The notes below the pieces were generated by a model, which worked only from the letters and a program-made list of their open reading frames with translations, did no database searches and was not told where the DNA came from. Below are positions 39,758-64,000 of a stretch of DNA of 64,000 nucleotides, piece after piece (within the stretch, counting starts at the first letter, position 1; the number at the start of each line of letters is the position of its first letter). Source of the stretch: Amphiscolops sp. MND2022 (Eukaryota). Position numbers and translations under genes: made by a program. Location: positions 44,268,001 through 44,332,000 of the forward strand of contig OZ076413.1 in assembly GCA_964187785.1 (NCBI GenBank). Direction: 5' to 3'.

Positions 39758-39796
39758 AATTTCCTCCTGTTCCAGTTTCCGTACAAAATGATTTTC

Positions 39797-40312
39797 TCAG
39801 TCTTTCTCAATGGTAGCTTTGTAAGCTTCTTTCAACTCTGAATCCTTACTTAATCTTCTCTCCATTGACAGAAACTGTTGGTAAGCAGAATAATAGTTGT
39901 TCGGCAAGTTAGCGTTGTCATCGGCCCAGAGGAGTCCTACTTCATAACGTTCGCCGTTATGCTTGGTAGTTTTTTCCAAGATTGCCTGGGCTCTCTTTTC
40001 TTCCTTAGAACGTCCTGAGACATCACACACAGACGCGTATGTCTCCATGTCCCACTATTTCTTCATTTGATCCGCTAAAGGATCCGAAGACACGGAGAGG
40101 TTACACGTTGCTCCCAAACAGTTTGTTTCTGCTTTGGGTAATGCTCCACTCACTGTCCATCCCAAAGAAGTTTTGACCGCCCAAGGTTCATTCCTATCAC
40201 CTGACTTATATTCAAGAGGTCTGATCAAGTGATACGCGTCTTGACCAAGAATGACCTTGACATCAGCCATCGAGACCTTTATATCCGGCAAATTTTTCAA
40301 ATAGGAATAAAT
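39797..40312 (-). pseudogene. Protease-to-RT linker of the same frame, carrying in-frame stops
   Basis: Pao-typical ILGQDAYHLI, AVKTSLGWTVSG and RYEVGLLW motifs are in frame with both flanking ORFs; stops at 40313, 40055 and 39797. Confidence 0.85.
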
Positions 40313-43318: not shown

Positions 43319-43367
43319 TCTATTTTCTTTTGCAAATCAAATTATGACCGAATCCCGCACAGTGCCT

Positions 43368-43388: not shown

Positions 43389-44542
43389 TTTTACGTCTGC
43401 AAGGTATGATAACAAAATCACTTACCAAGCTTTACGACGGCCTGGTTGACAACTTGCGGGCACGTCTAAGAATTGTTTCTGCGAGAAAGGCACTTGCAAA
43501 ATCCACTACTTTCAATAACTTCAAAATGTCCCTTCTTTTCAAGTTCTGGACAATACCTATTGTTTAAACAAGTTTTCGAGGTCGGTGAAGCAATTACTGC
43601 ATCTGTGACCACTTTTCGACTTGTTTAGAAAACATAGAATTTACTGACTTGAAGAGTTTTCTCATAAAACTCACTAAACCGTTGACTCGTCGATGAATTT
43701 GGGGAGTAACAAATCGTAGTCGATTAACTTTGCCAAAAGATTGAAAGTCTTCTGTCTCAAAACCTTTCCAAGCGAAAAATTGCCAGAAATGCAATAATAA
43801 TATATTGTTGGAATCTCGAATCCAGTGTCAAAACAAGAACAACTTCGCAATAGCTCTATAATAGCCCAAGTTAACTTGAATACTCAAACGATAAAGTTCC
43901 GAACAATTACTTTCTTGGTTGCTTGAACAAGGAATATCGACCGTTTTCAATCTCACCTTTTGGGTCTCTCTTTCAAGAAGGAGTTAACTTGGGTTGGTAA
44001 CAATACAGGAAATTACACAAACTGCCATGTTTACAATCAAATATGAGGGCACCATAAAGGTTCTATAATGATACATAAAGTTAACAAACTACCCACTTTC
44101 GAGGCGATAAAGCATATAAAGATATTGGTATATCAACATCTGAAGCATACATTTACACGATTTTGTGGTCCTTTAATATATTTGTTATTTGCCCACCAAA
44201 GCTTCTATCAGGTTACAAATGCTCTACCGGCTTCCGCCTGGGCTAGATATAACCAAATATGACCACTTGACAGGTTAAATACACAAGCAGGATGATAAAT
44301 TACCAAATTTGTACTATATTAGAAGAAAAGTCTGATTTTGCCCCAGAAAAAAATATTTTTCAAATTTTTGCCTTCGATTTCCGGTTTTTTGCCCTAGATG
44401 GTTTAGTTAGCTAAAAATATGTCGGTTGCCGACCATCCTAGAGTGTGATTCCCAAAACTCAATCTTTTACAGCCACCAATTAGGGGCTATTTTAGGGTAT
44501 TTTTCGAATAGCTGATTTCAAGTTATTCTCGAGGCGCCAACA
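43389..44542 (-). repeat. 5' LTR (1154 bp)
   Basis: Near-identical to 35619-36773. Confidence 0.95.
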
Positions 44543-47005
44543 GAGTACCCAAACATTTATTCACGACTTGCTTTGAGAACTTTCTAATTTCAAACGTACT
44601 TGTTACACTTTCTTTCCTTGTATGTCGTATAATAGTATACTCAGTTTGTGCCTAATACATTCCAACTTTGAAGGCAGGCTAAAACATGGAACTTGTTAGA
44701 AGGCTTTGGTTCTACCGCAGACGGACGAATTAAAGCGAACCAATTTAACAAGTTTCAGCCAAAACTGTCGTGCTTTCACTCCGGCCTTGAGAAGTCTACC
44801 AGCAGTTTAACGAAGACATGGAAAACTTATTATAGGCACCATAGAAAACATTAATCAATCTACCACCAAGAAACAATGGAAGACCAGCAGTACCAAGTTG
44901 CGTTAGTTTAGCCACATTAAAGTTTCATATAACTTACCTGTTTGTAGCTTTGAATACTTAAAGAGAAGCAAAATAGGGGAGAAATTTAATCCTCTAAAAT
45001 CAGGTTAGTCTTCGTTGAACTGAATGCTTGGTACATACATTAAAAGTTTAGGAAAACTGAATATTTTCCAGTTTTGCTGCAATAAAGAGAAAAATAAAAC
45101 TGATTAAAAAGAACTGATTAAAAATTTAGGAGGAAAGGTTTATCCGTAAAAAAAAACAAGGTAAAAACACGAAACTCTCTTTCACAAGTCCTTCCAAGAA
45201 AACTGTTCTGAATTATAACAGAAACCTAGACACGCGTGAGATCAAACCCAGAACGCTTGCAACCAAAAGCCAGGACTACGAAAAAGCCATTTTTTGATAT
45301 TTCCAGTTAGAAAACCCTTTTCGACCTCAAATTCCAATCTTTGTGATTTTTCCGACAAGAAAGCCCATAGAGTAGTTTTCGGCACTTCGAGATTTTCAAG
45401 ATTTCTCGTGGTGACAACTGCCTTTTAGCATATTTCAAAAGTATAAAAAAGATTTCTGAAGCCAAAAAGGTCTTCATTTTACAGTTCCTTCATTGTTCAC
45501 TTCTAATCACCTCTAGGGATGTTTGTCAGTACTGTGAGAGTCCGAAAAAACTTGTTGAAAATTGCGGAAAGATCCGCCTCAAATATTCCATTCTTTTGCA
45601 GAAAAAGGCCCGTTTTGGACACCATGAACTTCGAATTTTAATCCAAAAAGTTTTCTTTAAAAAACCTCGAGTTATTGTTATCGTTTTGAGCTTTGAAAAA
45701 GCCTTTATGGGCCATTGCCAGTTTCTTCAAAACTGAACATGCTGCATCATACTCATTATAAACATCTCATTTTGGACATCAAAAAATCTCTTATAAATGA
45801 TTTTTAAAATTAATTTTCTCGTGATTTGAATTTCGACTACTTTTTCAGTGCCAATTCGGGATACTCGTTACGGGTGCAGAGCAACTGAGGTGAAAATTTC
45901 CTCTTAGCTCATGAAAAGTGCTCATTAGCCTGGATGCAGGACGAAAAGTCCTGTTATGACTGACGTGGCACAAGCAACCGAATAATTATCTAAAAACGAT
46001 AGTTTTGTTGACTCATTTTATTGAAAAGAGGCATACTTAATAGCTTTGATAACTGTTAACCTACATCCGCTTTCAGTAATTGAATGTTTATAGATAGATC
46101 CTTGGAATAACATGGGAAGAAAGAAAACATTAAGCTTCTATTATTTTCATGTAAGGTCAGATAAGAGAAAAATATTTAATAAAGGGAGAACAATGAATAA
46201 TCGATTTAGTTGTTACATGGACTAGACTTGACGTCGGTAATATAATATTTAGGGTTGCTATCTCTTTCCACCTTTCTTGAGAATATGAGTGAGAAATTTC
46301 ACTTTCATATCATTCATTTCATCCAGCGAATTAAATTTGGATTCTTCAAATACGTTTGTAGTATATATAGAACCATGCATTCCTCTGATTCATTTCCTCA
46401 ACTAATAGATAACTAATCTGTTACATGCAGAGATATTGCTTTCTTCGACGGCTATCGTTACCATTGTTATCTCTCACTACTCGAAATTGTTACAGAATTT
46501 TGCTTGTGGTTTTCTCTGAAACCCACTCCGAGATATGATATTTTGGAAGTTTTCAAGGGTTGAGTGAATAACTGATCCAAAGAAACAACGTCTAAAAGTT
46601 TTGGCAGTAAAAGACGTCCATAGAAGGCAGTTAAGATCAGCTAAGGTCATATGCCTCTAAAGTCATAAACACAGAAGCGGAGCGGAGCGACGTGCCGCTT
46701 TTGATCTAGCAGCTGGAGTTGACGAGTCATATAACAACCCGTACTGAGACTCCATAGCATTCCATCTATCGTCATGAATGCTCGACGACTGTTCCATCCA
46801 TGGCCAAGTATGGGAACCAAAACTTTCAAAAAACGTCCTACCACTCTAAATTCATTGATAGGCTAAAACCTGGCCAACCCAACCATAGGTGATGTAGGTG
46901 AAAGTAGGAGACATTCTAAAGCCTCAAATATTCAATTGTCACTAAAAACTAAAAACCAGAAAAATCAATTAAAGTTATTGAAAACGCTAAAATATTTCGT
47001 TTAAG

Positions 47006-47068
47006 TAGCCTTAAGGCTATGTAAGACTGATTGAAAACCTTAATTAAGGTTTTCAATCAGTCTTACAT
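47006..47068. repeat. Two adjoining perfect palindromes centred on TTAA (14 bp and 50 bp)
   Basis: tagccttaaggcta (47006-47019) and atgtaagactgattgaaaaccttaa-ttaaggttttcaatcagtcttacat (47019-47068). Confidence 0.93.
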
Positions 47069-48284
47069 TGCAAGGTAATTCCTTAGAAGGCATTTTTGGA
47101 CCTTAATCCAAGTAAATAATGTTAGATGTCATTACTCTGGACGTTTTTCCCTTCAATCGTTGTAACGTTCGTCTGTCGTCTGGTCTGAAATAAAGCTGAA
47201 ATCAAACATGGCTCTTTCACATTGAAACAACCCTCGTAGGTTTAAACCGCTTGCCGTAGACAAACTTATGAGTCAAACAATAACTCGAGAATTCAAGTTA
47301 TTCTATTACAACTATTTGCTCATCTGATTTGACACTTTCCAATTGGATGACGTAATTCAAGCCCATTTATGTATGTCTCATGGCGCTTAATTGCATGATG
47401 GTTCAGGCCCGTTTCGACGAAGATACTACCATCAAAGAATTTATGCTCTTCAGAATCTCACTGCAGTATTAGACATTTTGACGACCGAATCAATATTTGC
47501 TATCTACAGAACTAAATCCCACGATCCGGTAAACAACAACAAGTTTGTTCAATTATGGGCAATAATTTCGTTCAATTGAAGCTACTTTATAATGATTCTA
47601 GCCAATAGGTTCAAACATCTCATTTCTTCTCGAGAAGTTAATCCTTGCATTATCCAGAGCCTAGATTCAACGATAACCAAATACTAATCGGGTAAGTTTC
47701 TTGTTGAACCGAGACAACATTTCAAGATTCTTCTAATTGTCAAAACTGGTCACTTCAGTTGAAACTTGCATGGCTAATTACTGTATAATCTCTATTCAAG
47801 TTCATTTTGAGGTTCTGATATCACGATAAGCTGTCGACTTAGCTGGCACTCGAAACTTGGTTTTCCTTTCGTAAAAGTGCTGTGTAAAAAAGATATCTGA
47901 TAAACGAGTAAAAAAGATATCTGAAACTTTCCATTAAAAATAATTCAAACAAGACGGGAACGTCCCAAGTCGGCGCCATATCTTAGGCTCAAAAATATTC
48001 AAGGAACAACTATTGGAAACATTTGGAAAAATTATTTTTTTCAAAAAAAAATTGAAATTTTTTTTTTCGAAAAAAAAGTATTTTTTTAGAAAGTCGCACA
48101 ATGCCGAAAAACTCAAAAAGAGGCCATTCAGGCTCATTAAACGTTTTTACAAACCGAAAACTTCAAAAAAAATGCAATTGATAGATTCCGAAAATTTTCG
48201 AAAAAAAAGTCGCATAGTGCCGAAAAAAACGAAAAAAAAATCAAACGAAACGAAACAAAGCTTTGGTCTCGCATCTACTTTTGG

Positions 48285-48345
48285 AAGCATAAAAAATTTG
48301 TGGTTTAGTGCGAGAATCGAACCCACGATCCCCTGCTTCTCAGAA
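48285..48345 (-). repeat. tRNA-derived (SINE-like) repeat
   Basis: Minus strand reads cgtgggttcgattctcgcactaaacc, a canonical B-box (GGTTCGATTC); homologous to 15385-15420. Confidence 0.5.
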
Positions 48346-48482
48346 AGTTAGTTGAACAAATGTGAACAAATGTGAACAAAGATTGTAAGAAAAGTGGACC
48401 ACTCAGAGTGAGATTGTCAACTGAAAAAAAACAAAAAAAAAAAAACTACTCACTGTAAGAGTCGGGCTTTTTTCCTTAAGGG

Positions 48483-50180
48483 AAAAGGCGCCGACTAAAA
48501 ACACTTGTGAATCTCACACTACCAAAAAATTCCCAATTCAAACATCTTTTCCCTGACTGAAAACATCAGAACACAATTGTCGAACTAGTTAAAAAACATT
48601 TCGGTTCAAAGCTTTCTCAGAAAAAAACAATTTCTCGAAAGTCAAATGCTCTTCTTCAACCATTGTGGGATTTTCATCTTCCATGAAGTCACTGTCAAAA
48701 ATTTTGACTGTAAAAATACTGAGAAAAATGCTGTCGAAATCATCAATAAATTTTTGCAGTTTTCGCCACTTTTTGAAAATTAGTTCTCGACACAAAACGA
48801 AACGCTAAAACCAGCTCGACTCAAGACACTGCGATTTTTTTGTAAACGATCACAGACCTTTTCATTGGCTGACCTTTCTACCTACCAATATCTCAAAAAC
48901 TTGATATTGTGATTTTTTTGGAAACTTTTTTGATTCGAAAAAATGCCACACAGCGCCAAAATTACCCAAAGGTGTGACCCTTAGGTTCGAGGAACAAATT
49001 CTAGAACCTGAAAACAAAAAAAATGAAGCAGCGAACATCTTGCGAAAAAATGTAAATGTTGCTAGCAGCTGAAAATGCCACGATTTTCACAAATATTGAT
49101 ATTGAGAAACGTCTCATCAGTCTCACAAGACCAAAAAAACTAGTAGTGATCCTTGAAACTCGTTTTTGAGTAACACAACTTCAAAAACTAAAATCTGTGT
49201 GAATTTTTGAATTTTTTGCTTTAAAATATTTCGGTAAGTTACACAGTGCTCTTACGTGCAAAAATTTCGCAGTGCGAAAATCTCTGAAGATGCCCGGCCT
49301 CCAAAGGACGCCTTTCAGGTTTTTTCAGTTTTTATGTGATATGTTTTCGATTTTGTGACAATCGAAGGGACCCCCCATTTTTTTGCAGAAAAAGCGCTTT
49401 TAGAGCATGGAGGCCATGCGAAAAGCGTCGCATAGTAACGAAAAAAAACTTGAAAGGAGTCCTTTGGTATTTCCGGTACCTTCACAAGCACAAAAAGTTT
49501 TGGTCGAGCGCGGGACTAGGACCCACGTAAAAGCAGTGGACAACTCACTCACAACGGTGAGACATCCGCGTTAACTGCTGGGCCAAGTGTCCTCTAGCCT
49601 TACAAATGAATTGAAATTGTAACAAAAATTCTCCGGCTAAATTCAAGACTTTTTGTTTCTGAAGAAAACAAAAAATTACAAACCTCTCCAAAAAAAATTG
49701 AATGAAATGTCAAAAAAAAAGAACATAAGAACACAATTCTCCAAATCTCCAAAAGAAGAGTTTTTGGAATTTTTGAAATGTGGTACTCTGTTGAAATTTG
49801 TACTGCGACAACTCAAACCCAGCGACAAGTCATATGAAGCTAAAAGTGGTATCACATGAAAAAAAGCTATATCAACCGACAACAATGCATACCAAAAACT
49901 GAATTCCATCTCAGAGACAAGTTGAAAATTTTTTTCTAAAATATTATCAAATAAATTGGGAAGTTTCACCAAAATCATAAGCAATCTCTAAACTTGATGA
50001 AAATCTTGAACTTTTGTACTCAAAATTGCATTGGACAATAATTTTATTATCAAACTTTGATTGCAGAAGGTTTGCAGAAAAATGAACTTGGGTGAAATTC
50101 AGCAAAATGATAAGTAATTAGAAAAATTTCGGAATTTCTAAATGCAGCCAATTTTGAAGCGTTTTTAGTCGGCGCCTTTT
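48483..50180. mobile_element. Non-autonomous TIR DNA element (~1.7 kb)
   Basis: Perfect 20-bp inverted repeats aaaaggcgccgactaaaaac (48483-48502) and gtttttagtcggcgcctttt (50161-50180); TTAA just left of the left TIR; no transposase ORF. Confidence 0.65.
49485..49595 (-). repeat. tRNA-derived repeat nested in the TIR element
   Basis: cacttggcccagcagttaacgcgg on the minus strand matches cacttgaccccagtggttaatgcgg at 15342. Confidence 0.45.
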
Positions 50181-50879
50181 GTGAAGCAAAAAATGCCTAA
50201 CTTTTACAGTGACCACCATTTTTTTCTCCAGACCATAGACCTCACACTGAAAAGTCCACTTTTTACAGAAACTACTAAAACTACTAAACTACTACCGAGT
50301 CAGGCCAGCGGAAACTTGGTGCAAAGGGTCCCCCTTCATCTTTTCCTTTAATGTAACCAACAGAACCGGACGAGATTAAAGAGTCCCCCTTCCGATTTTT
50401 TCGGCACTGTAGGACTTTAATTGTAATTTTTAAAAATAATTCCAAAGGGTCCCTTTTTTTGATATTTTGCAACATAATGGATGATTAAAAATTCCAAAGA
50501 GTCCCCCCTTTTAATAATTTTGACACTATGAGTTCAAAATTCTCGTTTTTTGTCTGATAATAGCTTATGTCAATATATATCCAATAATTTTTATTTTCCG
50601 TCCATATTTCAAATGGAAAAGGAAAATATATAAATCAAACGGTTTTTTTACAAAATTTGCCAAGAATTAAATTTATATCCTAGCTAAAGGGTTTCACCCA
50701 TAGAATTCAACTGATGAAACATTGGTATCATGCGGAATGTATTTGTCGAGGTTTTTGGACTTTTTTTGGTTGACCCCAAAGACCCCAGAATGACCCAAAA
50801 ATGACCCCAAAGATAGTAAAAACTGCAAAATTTTCCAATTTTATGCAATTTTTGTCAAATTATCGATTAATTTCCTGGC

Positions 50880-51850
50880 TTTGAATGTTGAAAACAATTC
50901 AAAAAGAAACAAATTGTTATCAAAAAGGCTTTTTCAAAGATATAAAAGCACTTTTTAATGAAAAAATGCCTCAAATTCAGACCCAAAATGACAAAAAAAC
51001 TCGAAAATTAAGGAATTTTTTAGAATTTTTTTGCAATTTTTGTCTATTTTTTGAAAAACTTGGTGGTTTAGAATGTCAAAGACGTTAAACAAGGAAAACA
51101 TTCGTTGTCCGAGAGGCTTCCTTGAAGAGATAAAAGCAATTTGTGTTGAAAAATTGCATCAAATGTTGACCGAAATTGACAAATTACTTGAAAATGCAGA
51201 TTTTTGAAACTTTTATGCACTTTCACATGCAGTGTATTTTCCGAAAGACTTGGTGGCTTGGAATGTTAAAGACGTTCAAAAAGGAACAGATTAGTTGTCG
51301 TGGAGGCTTTAAAGAGATAAAAGCAAGTGATGTTGAAAAAATGCATCAAAATCAGACCGAAATTGACAAAAATACAAAAAAAAACCAATTTTTGAAAATT
51401 TTATGCAGTTTTTGTGTACTTTTCGGAAAACCTGTTGGCTTAGAATGTTGAAGACACTCAGTAAGGAACAAATTTGTTGTGGTGGTTGTTTCTTCGAAGA
51501 GATAAAAGCCATTGGTGTTAAAATGCATCGAATTCTGACATAAGTTGACAAAAACACGAAAAAAAATCAAGTTTTGAATTTTTTATGCAGTTTTTGTGTA
51601 ATTTGGGAAAACCTTAGTGGCTTCAAACTTCAAAGACGTTCAACAAGGAACAAATTGGTTGTCAGGAGGGCTTCTTTAAGGAAATAAACGAGGTTTTGTA
51701 ATGAAAAAAAAACGCACAATTTGCGACAAAAAATGACAATAATTTCAAAATGTACCAAATTTTCACGTTTTCATGCGCCTTTTGTCAAATTTCTGAAGAT
51801 TTCATGGATCGGAACGTTAAATACCTTGAACCACAAATGATTTCGTTGTC
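50880..51850 (+). repeat. Degenerate satellite, ~180-190-bp unit, ~5-6 copies
   Basis: Recurrent gaatgtt(g/a)aagac...aaggaac...gagataaaagc...gcatc...ttgacaaaa...ttttatgca near 50883, 51071, 51261, 51443, 51625 and 51812. Confidence 0.8.
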
Positions 51851-53059
51851 CAATAGGGTTGTTTGCGGAGATAAATGCAGTTTTATATAAAAAAGAATTG
51901 ATATAAGGACCCCGAAATAGTCAAAAAATCTTACACTTTTTACATTTTTGTATTTTACAACGCTTTTTTGTAAAAGTTTACACCATTCCATAGAATAGAA
52001 CACAGAAACGATTCAACAACAACTGAAGGCGTAGTCCGGTTTGGCTTTTTGATGGGATAAGTGCCAGTTTCTGATAACAAACGTGCTCTAATTTGACTCA
52101 AAAAATGTCGAAAACTCCCAGAATTTCAAGTTTATGTAGGTTCTTCATGTTACTTGAGTACAATTTTTAAGAATTTGTTGAGTTAGATGGTTCAAAACAA
52201 TCAAAGGCGATAGAATCAGGTATCTAGTTTCCCTTCTTGATGAGAAAATTACAGTGCTTTACATCAGAAATATTTCAAATTTGTACTTTTTCCTGCATTT
52301 TGTGTTCAAATTTTGAAAGTTTTTTTGACTAGGAAAGTTTAAAACACTAAAAAACGAAATAGCTAGCTATGCAGTATGCTATGTTGAAGAAAGTTGCAGT
52401 ATTTTGCATCAAAAGTACTTCAAAAGTGAACCTGATGAGTCCGAAATAAAAAGTCTAAATTCATCGTTTCTTATGCAAAGTTCTGAAATTTTTGAGAAGT
52501 TCCCATCGTTGGAAGAAAGCAAACCCTCAACAGCAAACAAATACATTATTCAGCAGGTTTTTATAAAGTGAATTGCAGTTTCACGTTAGAAAAGAGCCTC
52601 AAAATGACTCAAAAATTTTGGCAGTTGTTCGACAATTAGTGAATTTCTATTGAAAGTTACCAAAACTACATAATAGTCCAGAAGTCTATCCTTTTGGAGT
52701 AGGCGTGCAGATTTTTCAAAAAAGAGATCGACAATTGTGGATGCAAAAAGTTGGTCAGATCGACTTTTTTTGAAATGTTGATATACTTTTTTGTAAACGT
52801 TTCGAGCAATTTTGTTATTCAAGAACGACTGGACCCGTTATCCAATAGGCGTTTTTAAAAAGACATCTACAGTTTCTTATAAAAGTTCCTCAAATGACCA
52901 CAAAGTTGTCGAAAAAGCGGAAATTTGTATAAATTTGACGTTTTTGGCGACTTCGCGCAAATATAAAAAAAAAATCAATTGGTTAGGTTTTGGAATACAC
53001 ACAATCTGACAAAAAACCAATTAGGTGTTTGGTGTCTTCTTGAAGTGTTCCCTTCTGAA

Positions 53060-53360
53060 ATGGCATGACATTATTCAAAAAGTGTCAAACCTTTTCTCAT
53101 CAAACCTCTATGCGTTTTCATCGTTTTCATAGTGTAATGGCTACTCTTGAGCCTCAAAAGTATGTCATTGCTATAACAGTTGGGACGGAAAATATCCTGC
53201 TGGTCAGCGGGCGTCTTGTTTTCAATACCTTCCGAATTTTTGACGTAATATCCGAAGTGAAAGGTTTCATCCGAATTGTGATCTGATTTGAGTTAATGCT
53301 TAACATGAATTGTCGCTTGATGTGAGTTGCAACTATGGCGTGAAATTGAAATGACACGAA
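53060..53360 (-). pseudogene. Second fragment of the unidentified ORF family at 5400-6590
   Basis: cttgagcctcaaa...ggaaaatatcc...cagcgggcgtcttgtt is shared with 5445-5520. Confidence 0.5.
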
Positions 53361-53831
53361 TTTTTGCCAGCACTTCTTGAATTTTTTAGCACAAATTAAG
53401 ACCTAATAGCTCAATTCATCGAGTTGTCTGTCCCAAAGTAGCAGAAAAGAAGATGCCTGTAAAATTAAGTGCATTACAAAAATTAATTCCTGCTGTGCCT
53501 AAGTTTCACACTTTCAGCAATAATTATCTGGCTCAATTATACTTACTACCCAGTTGAAGAGTCGAAAAAGAGCTTTACTTAAATGCAAACTTTTTCTCAT
53601 AATATAGTCATAAAATTTAAATTATGCCGACCAAGAAAGAAGAAGAAAGCTTGTTCTCCCAATTCCGCGGTGTGGACACCGAATAAGCAGTTCTACTTTT
53701 TTTAAAGTCGGTGCCTTCTCGGATACCTCTCCATATCTCCTTATGGCACCCAGGACATTTTATTAAACTTTCTCGGGAGGTTATGGGTACAGTTAATATG
53801 TTGTTTGCTTCAGAATTGGTCCTCATTTCAG

Positions 53832-54098
53832 ATCTGCGAAAACTTCAAAAGCGACATCAGATGTGTAATGGATCAGCTCGACAGATGTTTCGCTCTCAAG
53901 TTTTCCTGCCAAGATGTCCCCTCTTCGCACACGTGGAGCGAGATTGGACCCTACATTGTCATCGAAAACAACGAAGGAGAAACTGTGGGTCAGACTAAAC
54001 TTGTGCGCAAGACTGCCTTCCCAGTGTGGCCAGACGTGTATGTCCCCGAAAACAGGCTGACTTTTGGCCAGAATGATGACACGTGCATGCTATTCAAG
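53832..54098 (+). CDS. Exon of the C2-C2-repeat gene: N-terminal part of the first C2 domain
   Basis: catttcag acceptor (an alternative in-frame acceptor lies 18 nt upstream); FALKFSCQDVP...PYIVIE...GQTKLVRKTAFPVW...CMLFK; donor aag|gttaga at 54099. Confidence 0.7.
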
Positions 54099-54756
54099 GT
54101 TAGAGAGAAACAAGTCGGGAACAATCCAGGTCGGTACCACACACGAGGCTCAAAAAAGAGCCAATGTTTTTCTAAATGCCGGCGGACATCTGATAAGAAA
54201 ATTGGCTCAATTTCACAGTCTCAAGTAATACCCCGAAGAGGCCTTGAAACTTGAGAAATTTGAACTAAAAGTATCACGAAACCCAATTGTCTCGAAAAAC
54301 AAACTTTTCAGGAAAAGTCTGAAAATGTCGTGAAACCCAAAAGGGACCCTTTATGCTCGGAAACCGCCTTTTCCTGACTTAAAAAAATTAAAAATTCAAA
54401 AGGGAATGAAAAATCAAATTCGAGAAAAGTAGGCACAGAGAAAACTTTCATCAGTCCAACATGACCAAAAAACAACCAAAGCAGCATAGCTAAAGGTTAC
54501 AAACTAATGCGCATTTAAATGCTCTGGCAAGGTCTGTCTCTCAGCCTGAAAATCTGGTTTTCGGAAATTTGCCATTTTTTCAGTGATCTACGCTGAAACA
54601 AGCCTGAAAAACTTAGCAATAGAATTGAACTAAACGGGATTTCAGTACGAATCTTGCAACGGGATCAATGACAGCCAAGATCTTTCGAGAGATTGAGCAG
54701 CCAATATGCTAAGAATAGGGTCGACCCGGGAAGTTATAAGTCGTAGGTTGTTGTAG

Positions 54757-54910
54757 GTTATCTTCAAGTTGTACGTCTACAAGTTCATGCAGCAAGACGA
54801 GTTGTTGGGCAGTGTTTGCGTAGAGGTCAATGACCTTTATGAGGCCGAGCAGAGGTCAACGCACAAAGTTTGGGTGGTAGATGACATGGACAGAGATGAC
54901 TGCTTCCTAG
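54757..54910 (+). CDS. Exon of the C2-C2-repeat gene: C-terminal part of the first C2 domain
   Basis: ttgtag acceptor (or aag at 54768); (VIFK)LYVYKFMQQDELLGSVCVEV...DDCFL; donor ctag|gtgggt in phase 1, matching the next exon. Confidence 0.7.
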
Positions 54911-55243
54911 GTGGGTCATCAATGATTCAGACTGCATCTTTCTTCTTGCATAGATGTCATTTCCCATAAATCATCATCATTTTCCCATGATGAAGTTTCC
55001 AATTTTTCACAAAAACAGAAGGAAAATTAGGCAAGTTTCCTTGATTTGAAAAACGTTGTCACGAAAAAACGTGGTTGCTTACATGTCGAATAACTTTTAT
55101 CATGAAGGAACTCACTGCACTTCAAAATGGGTATTTATTGATTCGGTAATAATGGCAACTTTTACCAACAACCTTTTCTGCATTTCTAGTACATTGGGCA
55201 AAATAAGATTAAAGCTTCACAAGATGACGTAATTACGTTTCAG

Positions 55244-58200
55244 TTTTGGAGGAATGCCGTTTGGTGACGAACACATTGGTGCTAGAACAACTACAAGCAG
55301 TGTCAGTGGACTACAGCTCCGACAAGCTCACACAGAAACTATTGAAGAAACTCTACGCCAAGCCAGAATTCACTTTAGCCGTCAAGTTTCGAGGTATCAA
55401 TTTGGCTGATACGGATATCATCGGCAAATCAGACCCATATTTGGAAGTTTTGGACCTCAATAACAAAGTTCTTTATCGCACAGAAACAATCAGAAACAAC
55501 TTAAACCCCAAGTGGAGAGTGTTCAGCCTCGCTCAACGCCAGTTTGCCCCAAATTGGAGCTTTCATCAACTAATTTTCAAAGTTTTTGACCGAGATTTAA
55601 TCGGGAAAAACGATTTAATTGGCCAGGTAGAAATCAATGGAAGAATTTTGATGGCTGCGAGTAAACAGAAAAAATCACTAACTTGGCGGCTTTATGAGAA
55701 AACGATCGAAACTGGGATTCAAAACGACATTCCTTTAATGAGGGGAAAACTGAGGTTGGACTACGCACTTGCGAACCAAGAATTTCCAGACTTGCCGGAG
55801 TTGAAAGTTTTGGAAGATGAACTTGTGTTCTATAACAAACATAGAGGATCCATTGATACCTTACTGCAGCATGCCAGTGTTCATGGGCTGGTCGCAATTG
55901 AAGATGTGCTTACTGGCAACGAAGGAAATAAAGTCGACGACACAACTTTACCTTTTGCAGACGAATCTTCAGAACTTGCGTCACAAGAATCACGAGAACC
56001 TTCGTCGAGCAAAGTTTCAATTTCCGAAACCCCAATTCCCTTTTTAATTTCACATGAAAGTGCCAATGAAAATACTCTCGATGATACCAGCCCTGAAATT
56101 TCACGTCGCATCGAAAAGCATCCCATTTTGAAAGACATTACTCAAGAAACTGTAGACATAGATCAAAATATTGATGACAACAGTAGCAATGAGTTGCAGA
56201 AATCGACAGATACCAGAAATCCCGAAACCTTGAAAGAATCCGATGACGTCTGCAGCGCTCCAATTTCGGACACTACTGCAGCTTTAGATGATTCAAAACC
56301 TGAAAAAGTGTATGAGCAACAACCCGACCCAGAGCTTGAAAATTCGACAGATGTGGGAAATTATTCTGAGATTGAAAGTTCTGGAGAGTTTGAGAGGAAC
56401 AGGGAGAGATCAATCAGTCAAGAAAGTACTGAAAGTGACATCGAACCCCCAAAAGTGGATATAAAACCCAAGGAACGAAAAACAAGTCAAGTTGTCAACG
56501 ACATCAGCAAGGTGAGACGACTTTCGCTGATGATTCAAAATCCCGACAACTTTCTATCTCTAGATGGCCCTGAAAATGAAAGTTTCTGCAGATCACTGAG
56601 TCTTAAACGAGGGAACGAAAATTTATTGGATTGTCGAAGATCTGTACCTACAGAACTTCTCGATCAACTATTTGAGAAGAAAGAAAAACTGGTTTTGCCA
56701 GATGTTACGGACGCTGAAACGGACTTCGTTCAAGATGCTGACTTTCAGAAAGAAGAAACAGACGAAATCCATGTCGATCAACAGTTTTATCAGAGCGAAA
56801 TAATTAATTTGAAGAGAAGTAATTTAATCGAAGCAGCAGACTGTAACGCGACACAATTGAATAACCCGCAGCTGAATGATTACAAAAGGCGACGGAAAAG
56901 CGGACTTATGCAGCAAATGACCCAACCTAAGTTCATTGCGGAACTTGAACCTGTTCAAGATACGTCAAACAATGCGGACGGCAAAAGAAACTCTGTTAAA
57001 TTGAGAATGTTCACAAACTATTCAACATTCGAAGAATACGATGAAGATGAAATTATTGCTGAAGAGGATCTGGATTTTTGTCATGGGGCTAATGCGGATT
57101 ATTTAGACAATTTACGAGACAATTGCGGTGAAGATTCAAATACAAACCCAGTTGAGGTTACATCATCGGCTTCATTGGAAATTTCCAAACCCAATCCAAA
57201 AACGAAACGAGATGAGCTTTTGGCGAAAGTCAAAGAAGCAGAATTGAATAAACGCTTTGTTGACAGAAAAACGGAGACGAGTTCTAGCTCAGGATTCACG
57301 AGTACAACCAAAACTATTACCCACAGTATGAATAAGTTGAATGGGGAAAATGAAAACGGAATTGAGCCTGAAACTCGAACCAAGAGGAGCAAGTCATCTT
57401 TTGACATCACAGAAGATTTGAATTCTATGATGGATCAAACTGAAACGTTTGAGCAAAGCAAACGTTTAACAAAAAGTTCTCTCACCTTGAGCGATAAAAC
57501 CAATGAACTTGACGAAGAACGTGAAAACCCAGCGTCATCTATTAACCTTACAGAAGTAGCGAATGATGAAAGTGGAAAAACCATATCTACCAATCACGTT
57601 GAAGAAACAATACCGAATTCAACGGAAATGGAGCAAAGTGTAAACTCTGGTAACAAAAGTTTGGTGTTCAATGGTCCAGAAAAAGAATATAACTCCAGTG
57701 ATGCACATATAGTTCATGAATCTCCGGAATTCATCCAGGAAACGAAGTCAACGCATAGTTTATCAGTTGGTGTACCCAAAAACCATGAATCCAGAAGATC
57801 GGATATTAAAACCGCACACGGATCCCAGCAAAGATCAAGATCATTGACTCTGTACGTGAGTGATTTCGAGAACAAAATTCCTGAAGCCCAAAAAGATGAG
57901 TTTGAGTGTCGAGTAACTAGAAGCGAAGAGTTAACAAGAAGACAATCTTCATCTATTATAAAACGCCTGTCATTCAAAAAACCAAGAAGTTCTACTCATA
58001 AAGAAATAATAGCTTCAGAAGAAGTCAAGGAAAGAAAGTTCAGAAAGAGTAAAAAATTGACACAATCAGCGCAAAATCTTAGTGAGAAAGACTTAAAAGT
58101 AGAAGCAATGATTTCTGCTGAGGCACCCGTCTTTCATAAATCTTCTCAGATGAGAGATCGAGCAAAGACTATTGAAGGCCATGGAGAAGTCACTGAAAAT

Positions 58201-61200
58201 ATTAAGGACGCTGATGATGTATTCTACGAGACTCTCAAATGTGATTATCAGAACCAGTTTGGGTTAAGTGATACAAACAATGATTCCAAAAGCAGCAATA
58301 AAACGCCAGAGAAGCGTGACGAAAAAGACAAAAAGATTCCGGATAAAATTGCAAATTGCGAAAATCCCACACCGAAAATAGTCGGGAAAACGAAAGAATC
58401 CGATGGAATGGTTGTTTCAAACCAAGCTTCCATTGAAAACGCAGAAACACCAAAATCTGATAGAGAAGTTGAAGACAAGGAAACGAAGGCCAAAACACCT
58501 ATTTCTATTGCAAACTTAGAAAGACAAAATTCCGATGGGGACGTTGACGAATTAGACATGAATGTCAAAACTTCGACTAGAATCTTGGAGTCAACAGGAA
58601 GACTCTCGGAAACTGAAATTGTGGATATAACTCCGAAGGTACCAAGCGAATGTTCTACTGAAAACACAGTACCTCAAAGACCAGACGAGGAAATACGAGG
58701 AGGGGAGATGAAAACCGAACCAACTATTCGAACCTCGCAGTCTGCAGGTAAGCTACCGGAAACTAGAATTGTAGAACAAGATCCAGAGGAACGAAGAGAA
58801 CCTTCCACTGAGAACGCAAAAACTCAAACTACTGATAAGGAGGTTGTTGAGCTAAACTTGGAAACGAAAACCTTTAGTGTACCATTGGAGTCGTCAAGGA
58901 AGCTATCGGAAACAAGAATTGTCGATCCGGCTGAAGAATTACAACACGTACTCTCCACAGAAAATGCTGAAACTCACAAACTTGATACGGAAGTTGTCAA
59001 GCTAGACATGAAAGAGGACACCTCTACTGACACCTTGGAGTCACCAGAGAAGCTGTTAGAAACATTTCATGTAGATCCGACACTAACGGAACCGAGGGAA
59101 ACTTTGCCTGGAAACACAGAAACGCAAAATTCCGATGCGGAGGTTGATGAGCTGTGCGTGAATGCAGAAGCAACGACAGGAACCCTAGACTCATCAGGAA
59201 TGGTACCAAAAAATAGTACTAAAGGTCAAAGACCAGAGGAACCAAAAGATTTTTCTACTGGAAACGCAGAAACACAAGCATCTGATGAGGAAGTCGAGGA
59301 GTTTCAGTTGAAGGCAATAGCTTCAGTTGGAACCATGAATTCATCTGGAATGTTCCCGGGAACGAAAACTGTAGATGCAAATCACGGGATATCGAAGGAA
59401 ACGTCCATCGAAGATGCAGATATACAAACATCTGATAGAGAAGTTGATGAGCTAGACAAGGTGGACCCCTCTATAAGAAGCCTGGAGCCAACTGGAACAC
59501 TAACAGAAACTAGCATTGAATACCAAAACACTGAGGATCCGAAGCAATCATCCCCCGAAAAAGGAGAAGCACAAGATTGTGATAAGGAAGTTGACGAGCT
59601 TACCTTGAAAGCCAACATCCATACTGGAACCCTGGAAACATGTGGAATTCTACCTGAAACTAGCACTCTAGAAGAAATCTCCGAAGATTCGAAGCAATCA
59701 TCAGCTGGAAACGCAGAAAAACAAGAATCTGATGAGGAAGTTGATGAGCTTAAATTGAATGCTAACACGTCTACTGGAACCCTGGAGTCATCTAGTATGC
59801 TACCGGAAACTAGCACAGTAGACCAAACTTTCGAGAGTTCGAAGCAATCATCAAATGGAAACGCAAAAACACAAGAATCTGATGAAGAAGTTGAGCAGCT
59901 TAAATTGAATGCGGAAGCTTCGAATCAACCAATGGAGTCATCTGGAATTCTACCGGAAACTAGCACTCTAGACCAAAATCCCGATAATCCAAAACAATTC
60001 TCAACTGGAAACGCCGAAGCGCAAAAATGTGAGCAGGAAGTTGACGATCTCAAACTGAACACCCCTACCGAAACATTGGAGTCATCTGGAATGCTACCGG
60101 AAACTAGCACACTAGACCAAAATTCCGACGGTCCCAAGCAATCATCCACTGAAAGCGCAGAAAAACAAGAATCTGATGAGAATGTTGATGAGCTTAAATT
60201 GAATGCTAACCCATCTACTGGAACCCTGGAGTCATCTGGAAAATTATCGGAAACTGGCACTCTAGACCAAAATTCCGAGGGTCCGAAGCAATCTTTCACT
60301 GTGAATCCAGAAACACAAGAATCTGATGAGGAAGTTGATGAGTTCGACATGAATACGAACACACCTACTGGAACCCTGAAGTCATCTGGAAAATTATCGG
60401 AAACTGGCACTCTAGAACAAAATTCCGACGGTCCGAAGCAATCATCCACAGAAAATGCAAAACAACAAGAATCTGATGAGGAAGTTGATGAGCTTAAATT
60501 GAACGCTAACCCGTCTACTGGAACACTGGAGTCATCTGGAATGCTACCGGACACTAGCACTCTAAACCAAAATTACGAGGGTCCGAAGCAATCTTCAACT
60601 GGAAAAGCAGAAACACAAGAATCTGATGAGGAAGTTGATGAGCTTAAATTGAATGCTAACACGTCTACTGGAACCCTGGAGTCATCTAGTATGCTACCGA
60701 AAACTAGCACACTAGACCAAAATTCCGACGGTCCGAAGCAATCTTCAACTGAAAATGCAGAACAACAACAAGAATCTGATGAGGAAGTTGATGCGCTTGA
60801 ATTGAATGCGAACACGTCTACTGGAACCCTGGAGTCATCTGGAAAGTTACCAGAAAGTAGGACACTAGACCAAAATTGCGACGGTCCGAAGCAATCATTC
60901 ACTGAAAATGCAGAACAACAAGAATCTGATGAGGAAGTTGATGAGTTCGACATGAATACGAACACACCTACTGGAACCCTGGAGTCATCTGGAATGCTAC
61001 CGGAAACTAGCACACTAGTCCAAAATTCCGACGGTCCGAAGCAATCTTCAACTGGAAAAGCAGAAACACAAGAATCTGATGAGGAAGTTGATGAGTTCGA
61101 CATGAATACGAACACACCTACTGGAACCCTGGAGTCATCTGGAATGCTACCGGAAACTAGCACACTAGACCAAAATTCCGACGGTCCGAAGCAATCATCC

Positions 61201-64000
61201 ACTGAAAATGCAGAACAACAAGAATCTAATGAGGAAATTGATGAGCTTGAATTGAATGCGGAAGCTTCGAATCAACCAATGGAGTCATCTGGAATTCTAC
61301 AGGAAAATAGCACTCTAGACCAAAATCCCGATAATCCAAAACAATTCTCAACTGGAAACGCCGAAGCACAAAAATGTGAGCAGGAAGTTGACGATCTCAA
61401 ACTGAATGCGAACACCCCTACCGAAACCTTGGAGTCATCTGGAATGCTACCGGAAACTAGCACACTAGACCAAAATTCCGACGGTCCGAAGCAATCATCC
61501 ACTGAAAGTGCAGAAAAACAAAAATCTGATGAGAATGTTGATGAGTTCGACATGAAAGCGAACACTCCTACTGGAACCCTGGAGTCATCTGGATCATCTG
61601 GAAAATTATCGGAAACTGGCACTCTAGACCAAAATTCCGAGGGTCCGAAGCAATCTTTCACTGTGAATCCAGAAACACAACAATCTGATGAGGAAGTTGA
61701 TGAGTTCGACATGAATACGAACACACCTATTGGAACCCTGGAGTCATCTGGAATGCTACCGGAAACTAGCACACTAGACCAAAATTCCGACGGTCCGAAG
61801 CAATCATCCACTGAAAATGCAGAACAACAAGAATCTGATGAGGAAGTTGATGAGCTTAAATTGAATGCTAACACGTCTACTGGAACACTGGAGTCATCTG
61901 GAATGCTCTCGGACACTAGCACTCTAAACCAAAATTCTGAGGGTCCGGAGCAATATTTCACTGTGAACCCAGAAACACCAGAATCTGATGAGGAAGTTGA
62001 TGGGTTCGACATGAATACGAACAGACCTACTGGAACCCTGGAGTCATCTGGAAAGCTTCAGGAAACTAGCACACTAGACCAAAATTCCGACGGTCCGAAG
62101 CAATCATCCACTGAAAATACAGAACAACAAGAATCTGATGAGGAAGTTGATGAGCTTAAATTGAATGCGAACACGTCCACCGGAACACTGGAGTCATCTG
62201 GAATGCTACCGGAAACTAGCACACTGGACCAAAATTCGGACGGTCCGAAGCAATCATCCACTGAAAATGCAGATTATCAAGAATCTGATGAGGAAGTTGA
62301 TGAGCTTAAATGGAATACGAACACGTCTACTGGAACCCTGGAGTCATCTGGAATGCTACCGGAAACTAGCACACTAGACCAAAATTCCGACGGTCCGAAG
62401 CAATCTTCAACTGGAAAAGCAGAAACACAAGGATCTGATGAGGAAGTTGATGAGCTTAAATTGAATGCTAACACGTCTACTGGAACCCTGGAGTCATCTG
62501 GAATGCTACCGGAAACTAGCACACTGGACGAAAATTCCGACGGTCCGAAGCAATCATCCAGTGAAAATGCAGAACAACAAGAATCTGATGAGAATGTTGA
62601 TGAGTTCGACATGAAAGCGAACACTCCTACTGGAACCCTCGAGTCTTGTGGAAAATTATCGGAAACTGGCACTCTAGACCAAAATTCCGAGGGTCCGAAG
62701 CAATCTTTCACTGTGAATCCAGAAACACAAGAATCTGATGAGGAAGTTGATGAGTTCGACATGAATACGAACAGACCTACTGGAACCCTGGAGTCATCTG
62801 GAATGCTACCGGAAACTAGCCCACTAGACCAAAATTCCGACGGTCCGAAGCAATCTTCAACTGGAAAAGCAGAAACACAAGAATCTGATGAGGAAGTTGA
62901 TGAGCTTAAATTGAATGCTAACACGTCTACTGGAACCCTGGAGTCATCTAGTATGCTACCGAAAACTAGCACACTAGACCAATGTTCCGACGGTCCGAAG
63001 CAATCTTCAACTGAAAATGCAGAACAACAACAAGAATCTGATGAGGAAGTTGATGAGCTTAAATTGAATGCGAACACGTCTACTGGAACACTGGAGTCAT
63101 CTGGAATGCTACCGGAAACTAGCACACAAGACCAAAATTTCGACGGTCCGAAGCAATCATCCACTGAAAATGCTGAACAACAAGAGTCTAAAGAGGAAGT
63201 CGACGATCTTAAATTGAATGCGAACACGTCTACTGGAACCCTGCAGTCATCTGGAATGCTACCGGAAACTAGCCCACTAGACCAAAATTCCGACGGTCCG
63301 AAGCAATCTTCAACTGGAAATGCAGAAACACAAGAATCTGATGAGGAAGTTGACGAGCTTAAATTGAATGCGGAAGCTTTGAATCGAACCTTGGAGTCAT
63401 CTGGAATGCTACCCGAAACTAGCATTCTTGACCAAAGTTCCGACGCTCCGAAGCATTTATCAACTGAAAAATCAGGAACACAAAAATCTGATGAAGAACT
63501 TGATGAGCTTATCTTGAATGCGGAAGCTTCGAATCGAGCCCTGGAGTCATCTGGTAAGCTCCCCCTTGTTGATCAAACTCAAGAAAAACCGAAGGCACAA
63601 GGCTCCGATAAAAAAGTTGATGATCTGGAGACGAATGCCAAAGCATGGTCTGGAAACTTGGAGCCGACAAGAACACCACCGGAAACTGAAACCGCAGATC
63701 ATGTTCAGAATGGACCGAACACAAAAACAGCAAAATCAGAGCAAGAAGTTGATGTGAATGAATTGAGTACACAAAAAACTAAAGAAGTTAATGTAAAAAT
63801 TTCATGTAGCAATTTTGACAACCAAAAGTCACCCTTAGAGTTATCAGCTAAAATTATGGAGCCAAAATCAGACGTTAATGGACAAAAAATTCTACCTATC
63901 ACATCAAACATCCCTTTGAAATCATTGCCCAAACCGCCAAATGACCATGATCACAACTGTAATGCAAGCACGTTTGAATCAGATAATGGAAGAAAACTGG
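55244..64000 (+). CDS. Giant exon (over 2,900 codons, open to the window end): second C2 domain, acidic low-complexity linker and 50-aa tandem repeats
   Basis: gtttcag acceptor in phase 1; frame +1 translated through to 64000 with no stop seen. Copine-like C2: LAVKFRGINLADTDIIGKSDPYLEV...YRTETIRNNLNPKW...FKVFDRDLIGKNDLIG. All repeat-unit indels are multiples of 3. Confidence 0.9.
58450..63750 (+). repeat. Coding 150-bp tandem repeat, ~35 units (26 well conserved, starting 59725 to 63484)
   Basis: Consensus ESDEEVDELKLNANTSTGTLESSGMLPETSTLDQNSDGPKQSSTENAEQQ; unit lengths of 144, 150, 153 and 159 bp. Confidence 0.95.

What the first reader, a model, noticed from the sequence alone, without database searches (positions are those of the whole stretch)
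55244..64000. Hidden giant exon encoding a C2-anchored acidic protein with ~35 novel 50-aa repeats
Seen: over 8.7 kb of uninterrupted frame, missing from the ORF track, which lists only antisense shadows. Repeat consensus ESDEEVDELKLNANTSTGTLESSGMLPETSTLDQNSDGPKQSSTENAEQQ; every length variant preserves frame, which supports selection for coding. I do not recognise the repeat. Inference: a giant, mostly disordered polyanionic protein recruited to membranes by Ca2+, possibly a scaffold, elastic spacer, Ca2+ buffer or mineralisation-related protein. This is the strongest candidate for an undescribed system in the window.
Basis: partly seen in the sequence, partly recalled or inferred. Interest (0 to 1): 0.75.

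Follow-up and report, generated by a model that had tools for sequence, protein, structure and literature searches.

The report
Giant tail-anchored tandem-C2 acidic repeat protein
The long open frame is the last exon of a real three-exon gene for a 3,234-residue protein found so far only in acoel worms, with two lipid-binding C2 domains at the front, a very long acidic floppy middle holding 35 copies of a 50-residue repeat seen nowhere else, and a membrane anchor at the very end; nobody has studied what it does.

Summary
Window 55228-63999 (+) is stop-free for 2,924 codons and runs 561 nt past the window to a TAG, giving 3,111 codons. The exon starts at the acceptor at 55243/55244. Two small upstream exons (53868-54098, 54757-54910) add a degenerate C2A, so the gene encodes 3,234 aa.

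- **Architecture:** C2A, then a canonical C2B with all five Ca2+-ligand Asp, then about 2,870 aa of acidic low-complexity sequence (net charge about -350), then one C-terminal transmembrane helix. There is no signal peptide.
- **Repeats:** 35 tandem 50-aa units, all length variants in frame, dN/dS 0.57. No match in Pfam, in 5.8 billion proteins, elsewhere in this genome, or in the nearest orthologue.
- **Family:** small. Its only named members are RefSeq predictions from the acoels Symsagittifera ('dentin sialophosphoprotein-like') and Convolutriloba ('uncharacterized'). All members keep the N-terminal C2 module, an acidic middle and a tail anchor. Two short paralogues lie 540 kb away.
- **Function (inferred):** a cytosolic, organelle-anchored tether or spacer whose C2 head binds membranes in response to Ca2+. 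The mineralisation idea is unlikely.
- **Limits:** no RNA data exist, and the repeat count rests on the assembly alone.

This is a new variant of a known kind (membrane-anchored multi-C2 proteins) and of moderate interest.

The parts
53868..54098 (+). Exon 1. It starts at an ATG in a good context (gtaATGg) and encodes 77 aa, the first half of the degenerate C2A domain. The donor is AAG|GTTAGA.
   Evidence: Sequence conservation with two related loci begins exactly at the ATG (tblastx 77% and 36% identity). Pfam C2 scores 18.8 bits, E 0.002, below the gathering cut-off. The exon is colinear with the RefSeq orthologue N-termini.
54757..54910 (+). Exon 2, 154 nt, encoding the second half of C2A. 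The acceptor is ttgtag|GTT and the donor is CTAG|GTGGGT. It ends in phase 1.
   Evidence: In the relative L012 exons 1 and 2 form one uninterrupted ORF, which fixes the junction. The alignment to P0152 and P0159 crosses both junctions without gaps.
55244..64000 (+). Exon 3, the giant exon. It continues to extended coordinate 64563 (G000:C5:44332563), 9,320 nt including the TAG stop.
55360..55760 (+). C2B domain with its C-terminal strands. It keeps the five canonical Ca2+-ligand aspartates, in DTDIIGKSDPY and FDRDLIGKND.
   Evidence: Pfam PF00168, E 5.7e-13, aa 55-140 of the frame. PDB sequence hits are to myoferlin, BON1/copine, NEDD4 and synaptotagmin C2 domains. It is 77% and 51% identical to P0001 and P0002.
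55850..58530 (+). Non-repetitive acidic, Ser/Thr-rich linker of about 880 aa, net charge -55. It holds the family-wide motif P-x-x-R-K-x-S/T (KPKERKTSQV, aa 535 of the spliced protein).
   Evidence: No Pfam match. It is 36% identical to P0001 over about 550 aa. The motif is present in all 9 family members.
58531..63723 (+). Array of 35 tandem units of about 50 aa (150 nt). Consensus: SDEEVDELKLNANTSTGTLESSGMLPETSTLDQNSDGPKQSSTENAETQE. Units 1-7 and 33-35 are degenerate; the core units are 90-99% identical to their best, usually non-adjacent, partner.
   Evidence: There is no relative in Pfam, in the 5.8-billion-protein set, in the ESM Atlas, elsewhere in this genome or in orthologues. AF2 gives pLDDT 44.
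63724..64000 (+). Start of the non-repetitive C-terminal region of about 280 aa. The rest, including the transmembrane helix GGYWMLAAFAVGVLALGSAIY followed by RMQSSN and the stop, lies beyond the window at extended 64001-64563.
   Evidence: The last 30 aa are 63% identical to the C-terminus of P0001.

Best explanation
This is a genuine three-exon protein-coding gene in what is most likely an acoel (Xenacoelomorpha) genome. It encodes a 3,234-aa tail-anchored protein.

Shown by the sequence:
- An N-terminal tandem C2 module: a degenerate C2A without Ca2+ ligands, and a canonical C2B with all five.
- About 2,870 aa of acidic low-complexity sequence, net charge about -350, including 35 lineage-specific 50-aa repeats.
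- A single C-terminal transmembrane helix with only 6 residues after it.
- No signal peptide.

Inferred mechanism:
- The helix inserts post-translationally into an internal membrane. Its moderate hydrophobicity and +1 tail leave ER or mitochondrial outer membrane both possible.
- The whole chain then lies in the cytosol.
- The polyanionic chain acts as a long flexible spacer. Its contour length is of order 1 µm, taking about 0.36 nm per residue; this is my own estimate.
- The C2 head at the far end docks onto acidic-phospholipid membranes when Ca2+ rises. This would make the protein a Ca2+-switched long-range tether or spacer between membranes.

The repeat array is a recent expansion by unequal exchange that lengthens this spacer. 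Its sequence is only weakly constrained.
For: Gene reality:
- Zero stops in 3,111 codons, against 60-102 stops in the other + frames of the non-repeat part alone; shuffles give P about 3e-33.
- Canonical splice sites, and a gapless alignment of the spliced product with RefSeq orthologues across both junctions.
- Third-codon-position diversity is highest (0.16/0.12/0.23), dN/dS is 0.57, and there are 0 stops against about 14 expected among 20 units.
- Every unit-length variant is in frame.
- Allelic differences in independent short-read contigs of the same sample keep the frame: 5 synonymous, 6 missense, and one +1/-1 pair 4 nt apart.

Architecture:
- Pfam C2.
- The AF2 model of the orthologue N-terminus matches tandem-C2 structures, best BON1/copine C2A-C2B (E 2.7e-13), then otoferlin, myoferlin, E-Syt2 and Syt7.
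- The only hydrophobic segment is aa 3208-3231.

Family:
- A profile search of 1.84 billion representatives finds only 7 clusters with a full-length match to the N-terminal domain.
- Every one ends in a C-terminal transmembrane helix and has a net-acidic middle of 350-2,900 aa.
- So the C2 head, acidic chain and tail anchor are conserved while the chain's sequence and length are free, as expected for a spacer or tether.
Against: - There is no transcript or protein evidence for this species. No RNA run holds the stretch.
- The start codon is inferred from conservation only.
- The target membrane, Ca2+/lipid binding and tethering are all untested.
- Three short family members have lost the Ca2+ ligands, so Ca2+ switching is not universal in the family.
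- The repeat copy number rests on one assembly. Short-read contigs break at the array.
- dN/dS of 0.57 shows only weak constraint on the repeats.
- The AF2 model of the N-terminus is of moderate quality (pLDDT 65).
Confidence: 0.55

Rival explanations
1. The gene and architecture are the same, but the acidic chain is the working part rather than a tether. It would form a membrane-bound polyanionic brush or a low-affinity, high-capacity Ca2+/cation sink on an organelle surface. The C2 head would only regulate or fold back onto the protein's own membrane.
For: Net negative charge is the one property of the middle region kept in all members, from -30 to -415. The repeats carry 22.5% D+E and 25% S+T. 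About 29 S-D/E-x-E sites fit the casein-kinase-2 consensus (consensus from my own knowledge) and could add more charge.
Against: A brush or buffer does not explain why a tandem C2 module at the far end is the most conserved part, at 51-77% identity. Nothing measured here separates this reading from tethering.
Confidence: 0.2
2. The 35-repeat array has no function of its own. It is a nearly neutral runaway expansion inside a tolerant disordered region, and the protein works like its 1,500-2,300-aa orthologues, which lack the repeats.
For: The repeats are absent from the relative whose N-terminal domain is 77% identical and from all other members. Core units are 90-99% identical to non-adjacent partners while the edges are degenerate, the signature of recent unequal exchange. 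dN/dS is 0.57. Middle-region length varies eightfold across the family.
Against: No stop or frameshift has accumulated in about 5.2 kb, against about 14 stops expected in 20 units under neutrality. However, recent homogenisation would also erase such lesions. This reading is compatible with the best explanation for the rest of the protein.
Confidence: 0.3
3. One reading: a secreted or mineralisation-related acidic matrix protein. This echoes the RefSeq name 'dentin sialophosphoprotein-like' given to the Symsagittifera orthologue.
For: The composition is acidic and Ser/Thr-rich. RefSeq's automatic name for P0152 points the same way.
Against: There is no N-terminal hydrophobic segment or signal peptide in this protein or in the RefSeq orthologues. 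C2 domains are cytosolic lipid-binding modules (established knowledge). A single transmembrane helix 6 residues from the C-terminus leaves the chain in the cytosol. Pfam finds only C2.
Confidence: 0.03
4. The frame is not functional: a pseudogene, or an assembly artefact that inflates a satellite into an apparent ORF.
For: An open 150-nt unit stays open when amplified, so the length of the frame inside the array is not independent evidence. No RNA data exist. Short-read contigs cannot span the array.
Against: The 1,101 non-repeat codons before the array and 278 after it are also stop-free. They end in a conserved tail anchor. Orthologues and paralogues share the architecture. Short-read contigs reproduce 53800-58282 with 0 differences in runs X1 and X2.
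Confidence: 0.03

Closest known systems
Ferlins (otoferlin, dysferlin, myoferlin)
   Same: They are the known tail-anchored C2 proteins: cytosolic C2 domains, a single C-terminal transmembrane helix, and Ca2+/acidic-lipid binding. Myoferlin is the top PDB sequence hit for C2B, and ferlins are among the top fold hits.
   Different: Ferlins have 5-7 C2 domains packed into a folded ring, plus FerA/FerB/DysF modules, and no giant disordered acidic region. This protein has only two C2 domains, no Fer or DysF match in Pfam, and about 2,870 aa of low-complexity chain.
Copines / plant BONZAI1
   Same: An N-terminal C2A-C2B tandem. BON1 is the best structural match across both domains (E 2.7e-13) and a top sequence match.
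   Different: Copines follow the C2 pair with a vWA-like 'copine' domain and have no transmembrane segment. Here no copine domain is found, and the C2 pair is followed by a disordered chain and a tail anchor.
Synaptotagmins and extended synaptotagmins
   Same: A tandem C2 module tied to a membrane anchor by a linker, docking Ca2+-dependently onto a second membrane. The tether logic proposed here is that of E-Syt at ER-plasma membrane contacts.
   Different: The polarity is opposite: their anchor is N-terminal. They have short linkers, and E-Syts carry an SMP lipid-transfer domain. None of these features is present here.
RefSeq XP_063720918.1 'dentin sialophosphoprotein-like' (Symsagittifera roscoffensis) and XP_075245862.1 'uncharacterized protein LOC142339597' (Convolutriloba macropyga)
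   Same: True orthologues with the same C2A-C2B head (about 50% identity), the P-x-x-R-K-x-S motif, an acidic middle and a C-terminal transmembrane helix.
   Different: They are 1,528 and 2,304 aa long and lack the 50-aa repeat. They are computer predictions with no study behind them. The DSPP name reflects composition only.

Membership tests
C2 domain superfamily (Pfam PF00168) | Significant match to the C2 profile, and an eight-stranded beta-sandwich fold | tested here: met
   C2B scores E 5.7e-13, 49.4 bits, against a cut-off of 22. C2A scores 18.8 bits, below the cut-off. However, the C2A ORF of the Convolutriloba-like locus carries an unmarked precomputed C2 hit (E at most 1e-5), and the AF2 model of the orthologue matches tandem-C2 structures over both domains.
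Ca2+-binding (synaptotagmin-type) C2 | Five acidic Ca2+ ligands in loops 1 and 3 (equivalents of Syt1 C2A D172, D178, D230, D232, D238; residue numbers from my own knowledge) | tested here: met
   C2B has D-x5-D in DTDIIGKSDPY and D-x-D-x5-D in FDRDLIGKND. These are invariant in the three long members aligned. C2A lacks them. Actual Ca2+ binding is not testable here.
Tail-anchored membrane proteins | A single transmembrane helix within about 30-50 residues of the C-terminus and no N-terminal signal sequence | tested here: met
   The only Kyte-Doolittle peak is at aa 3208-3231 of 3,234, with 6 residues after it and none at the N-terminus. The same holds in all 8 relatives. Membrane insertion itself is not testable here.
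Ferlins | Five or more C2 domains plus FerI/FerA/FerB or DysF modules | tested here: not met
   Pfam finds C2 only, and there are two C2 domains in all.
Copines | C2A-C2B followed by the copine/vWA domain (PF07002; accession from my own knowledge) | tested here: not met
   Nothing but C2 matches in Pfam downstream of C2B at E up to 0.1.
Synaptotagmin / E-Syt | An N-terminal transmembrane segment or hairpin; for E-Syt, an SMP domain | tested here: not met
   There is no N-terminal hydrophobic segment and no SMP match.
Dentin sialophosphoprotein (name that RefSeq gave the orthologue) | A secreted protein with a signal peptide | tested here: not met
   There is no signal peptide, there are cytosolic C2 domains, and there is a tail anchor. 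The repeat consensus is not Ser-Ser-Asp; that DSPP carries Ser-Ser-Asp repeats is my own knowledge.

The most novel reading that the evidence does not exclude
Acoels have their own class of Ca2+-switched 'fishing-line' tethers. A tandem C2 head sits on a polyanionic chain of tunable length that is tail-anchored to an organelle. Chain length (350 to 2,900 aa) would be adjusted in each lineage by repeat expansion to set the reach or spacing between membranes. The 50-aa unit, with its S-D-E-E site fitting the casein-kinase-2 consensus, would be a phosphorylation-tunable spacer module born de novo in this lineage.
Probability: 0.2. Interest if true: 0.65.

Novelty: new variant of a known kind. Interest (0 to 1): 0.45.

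Why it matters
Membrane-anchored multi-C2 proteins (synaptotagmins, E-Syts, ferlins) are central to Ca2+-triggered fusion, membrane repair and membrane contact sites. This family combines their parts in an arrangement I did not find described in my literature and database searches: the C2 pair at the free N-terminal end, the anchor at the C-terminus, and a very long polyanionic chain between them.

The family appears limited to acoels, a lineage important for understanding early bilaterians. It is also a clear natural case in which the head and the anchor are conserved while the chain between them varies eightfold in length, and here has gained 35 copies of a repeat with no known relative. That makes it useful for studying how disordered spacers and new repeats evolve.

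In practice it is also a gene that ORF listing at window edges and composition-based naming ('dentin sialophosphoprotein-like') both get wrong.

Tried and rejected
- **Frame:** The open frame is offset by 2 because the exon starts in phase 1.
- **RNA evidence:** none is available. The four runs that hold the stretch are DNA-like contigs from one sample. They showed only that the non-repeat part is reproduced and that allelic variants keep the frame.
- **Repeat relatives:** Pfam, a 5.8-billion-protein word/HMM search limited to proteins of 1,711-5,444 aa, the ESM Atlas, this genome, and a profile plus Smith-Waterman against orthologues with shuffled controls. Nothing was found. By eye P0001 seemed to hold 3-4 similar units, but no score exceeded the shuffles, so I dropped that idea.
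- **Fold of four repeat units:** pLDDT 44. A regular strand pattern appears but cannot be interpreted.
- **Other motifs:** NPF/DPF, FFAT-like and LIR-like motifs are not consistently conserved.
- **Literature:** four searches found no paper on this family, and none that identifies the genome by its size.
- **Species:** not established. 'Acoel' rests only on the named orthologues.
- **Alignment of C2A fragments:** MAFFT placed them onto C2B. I did not use that alignment for folding.
Full report
**1. The observation**

The window contains one outstanding stop-free stretch, 55228-63999 on the + strand, 2,924 codons. The exon begins in phase 1, which is why a naive translation from 55244 shows stops.

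I located the window at G000:C5:44268001-44332000 in a 1.07-Gb, 1,929-contig genome and fetched the next 19 kb. The frame continues for 561 nt and ends at a TAG, giving 3,111 codons.

Over the same DNA, the other five frames have 38-102 stops in the non-repeat part, 17-195 in the repeat part and 4-31 in the tail. Shuffles of the 1,101 non-repeat codons average 75 stops, so P(0) is about 3e-33. The frame is therefore real and not a side effect of amplifying an open unit.

The ORF tool states that ORFs running off the source are not listed.

**2. Gene model**

Two related loci, found through protein homologues, each carry a C2-like ORF a few kb upstream on the same strand. tblastx between those loci and the window shows conservation starting exactly at an ATG at 53868.

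| Exon | Window coordinates | Content | Splice sites |
|---|---|---|---|
| 1 | 53868-54098 | 77 aa, first half of C2A | donor AAG\|GTTAGA |
| 2 | 54757-54910 | 154 nt, second half of C2A | acceptor ttgtag\|, donor CTAG\|GTGGGT |
| 3 | 55244-64563 (extended) | 9,320 nt, rest of the protein | acceptor tttcag\| |

The joined sequence is 9,705 nt and encodes 3,234 aa with a single terminal stop. In relative L012 exons 1 and 2 are one continuous ORF, which fixes that junction. The spliced N-terminus aligns without gaps across both junctions to two RefSeq orthologues. No further conserved upstream exon was seen in the 10 kb upstream that I compared (window 43400-55400).

**3. Anatomy of the protein**

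- **C2A (aa 1-128).** This domain is degenerate. Pfam C2 scores 18.8 bits, below the cut-off. The orthologous ORF at the Convolutriloba-like locus has an unmarked precomputed C2 hit. It lacks the Ca2+-ligand aspartates.
- **C2B.** This domain is canonical: PF00168, E 5.7e-13. The motifs DTDIIGKSDPY and FDRDLIGKND supply all five aspartates that ligate Ca2+ in synaptotagmin-type C2 domains (established knowledge). They are invariant in the three long members aligned.
- **Fold of the N-terminus.** An AF2 model of the orthologue's first 345 aa has pLDDT 65, rising to 75-85 over C2B. It matches tandem-C2 structures over both domains. The best match is BON1/copine (E 2.7e-13), followed by otoferlin, myoferlin, E-Syt2 and Syt7.
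- **Middle region.** About 2,870 aa follow with no Pfam match. They hold 21% D+E and 9% K+R, a net charge of about -350.
- **C-terminus.** The only hydrophobic segment in the protein is aa 3208-3231, GGYWMLAAFAVGVLALGSAIY, followed by RMQSSN and the stop.

With no signal peptide, this is the definition of a tail-anchored protein whose bulk faces the cytosol.

**4. The repeats**

TRF reports a 150-nt period with 27.1 copies and 82% matches. A profile built from 20 exact 50-aa units finds 35 consecutive units, aa 1102-2832 of the exon frame. The consensus is SDEEVDELKLNANTSTGTLESSGMLPETSTLDQNSDGPKQSSTENAETQE. Variant units are 48, 49, 51 or 53 aa, always in frame.

Evidence for coding constraint among the 20 exact units:
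- Diversity by codon position is 0.16, 0.12 and 0.23.
- Pooled dN/dS is 0.57.
- No stops are present, although about 14 would be expected from 319 differences if they fell at random. Copies are not independent, so this is indicative only.

The edge units (1-7 and 33-35) are only 58-71% identical to any other unit. Core units are 90-99% identical to a best partner that is usually 4-19 units away. This pattern of old edges and a young, homogenised core is typical of unequal exchange.

The unit has no detectable relative in any of these searches:
- Pfam.
- 5.8 billion proteins, within the length band searched.
- The ESM Atlas.
- The rest of this genome.
- The orthologues, tested with shuffled controls.

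AF2 gives no confident fold for four units (pLDDT 44). That is consistent with disorder but does not prove it.

**5. Family and taxon**

A profile of the first ~207 aa of exon 3 (C2B and its flanks) was scored against 1.84 billion representative proteins. It gives only seven clusters with a single full-length match; the other hits are multi-C2 proteins that score by summing many domains.

All seven, and their cluster mates, end in a C-terminal transmembrane helix and have a net-acidic middle of 350-2,900 aa.

The only named members are two RefSeq predictions:
- XP_063720918.1, 'dentin sialophosphoprotein-like', from Symsagittifera roscoffensis.
- XP_075245862.1, 'uncharacterized protein LOC142339597', from Convolutriloba macropyga.

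Both species are acoels, so the genome is most likely an acoel. I did not confirm this independently.

This genome also carries two short paralogues in tandem about 540 kb downstream, with open frames of 645 and 600 codons and the same architecture. One appears identical to database protein P0029 by eye, and at least one has its own C2A exon.

A short motif, P-x-x-R-K-x-S/T, lies 130-210 aa after C2B in all nine members. It fits a basophilic-kinase site, which is an inference.

Four literature searches found nothing on this family.

**6. Independent check of the DNA**

Contigs built from four short-read runs of one sample reproduce 53800-58282 with no differences in two runs. In the other two runs they show 11 substitutions and a +1/-1 indel pair 4 nt apart. 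Of the substitutions, five are synonymous and six are missense, none creates a stop, and the indel pair changes one codon.

The short-read contigs break at the array. The copy number therefore rests on the reference assembly alone.

**7. Mechanism**

Shown by sequence:
- The chain is cytosolic and tail-anchored.
- A Ca2+-competent C2B sits at the far end.
- Head, anchor and negative charge are conserved, while chain length and sequence are not.

Inferred: the helix is inserted post-translationally into an internal membrane. The long paralogues have moderately hydrophobic helices (GRAVY 1.5-1.8) with +1 or +2 tails, while one short paralogue group has very hydrophobic ones (about 3.0). The compartment cannot be called from sequence.

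The polyanionic chain would then hold the C2 pair at a distance, and Ca2+ would dock the pair on an acidic-lipid membrane. That makes the protein a long-range, Ca2+-switched tether or spacer. The main alternative is a surface polyanion brush or cation sink.

The repeat expansion may simply lengthen the chain, or may be nearly neutral.

The secreted or mineralisation reading is unlikely on topology. The RefSeq 'DSPP-like' label reflects composition only.

**8. Verdict**

Three things were missed:
- The real anchor, which lies just outside the window.
- The second C2 domain, on two upstream exons.
- The predicted orthologues already in RefSeq.

The protein is not a member of the ferlins, copines or synaptotagmins, whose defining features were tested and not met. 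It works most like a membrane-anchored multi-C2 tether. I rate it a new variant of a known kind, of moderate interest. The main open points are expression, target membrane and Ca2+/lipid binding.

Noticed in passing
G000:C5:44872923-44873513 (-) and G000:C5:44878526-44879107 (-); loci L015, L016, L021, L022: Two short paralogues (open frames of 645 and 600 codons) with the same layout of C2 domain, acidic chain and tail anchor lie in tandem about 540 kb downstream of the giant gene. One appears identical to database protein P0029 by eye, and it has an upstream exon matching C2A.
   Followed up: partly
window 56830-56860 (aa 535-544 of the spliced protein): The short motif P-x-x-R-K-x-S/T (here KPKERKTSQV) is kept in all nine family members inside otherwise unalignable sequence. 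It may be a basophilic-kinase or docking site.
   Followed up: partly
window 54361-54547 (intron 1): A dispersed high-copy element. Short-read contig depth is 5-7 times that of the flanks, and many contigs end at 54438-54481.
   Followed up: no
window 36752-43336 (-), 21233-22120 (-), 30941-31903 (+): A BEL/Pao retrotransposon gag-pol (Peptidase_A17, RVT_1, rve, DUF5641, DUF1759) and further integrase-like fragments. The part of the window upstream of the gene is rich in transposons.
   Followed up: partly
window 50962-51663: A tandem repeat of 182-190 nt, 3.8 copies, 73-79% matches, in the region upstream of the gene.
   Followed up: no
window 27672-27821: A run of 150 N (gap or masked).
   Followed up: no
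window 61684-62283 (model m18676dafed80): AF2 on four repeat units gives a regular pattern of four strands per unit at pLDDT 44. This is too uncertain to interpret, but worth a look if the repeats turn out to be structured.
   Followed up: no
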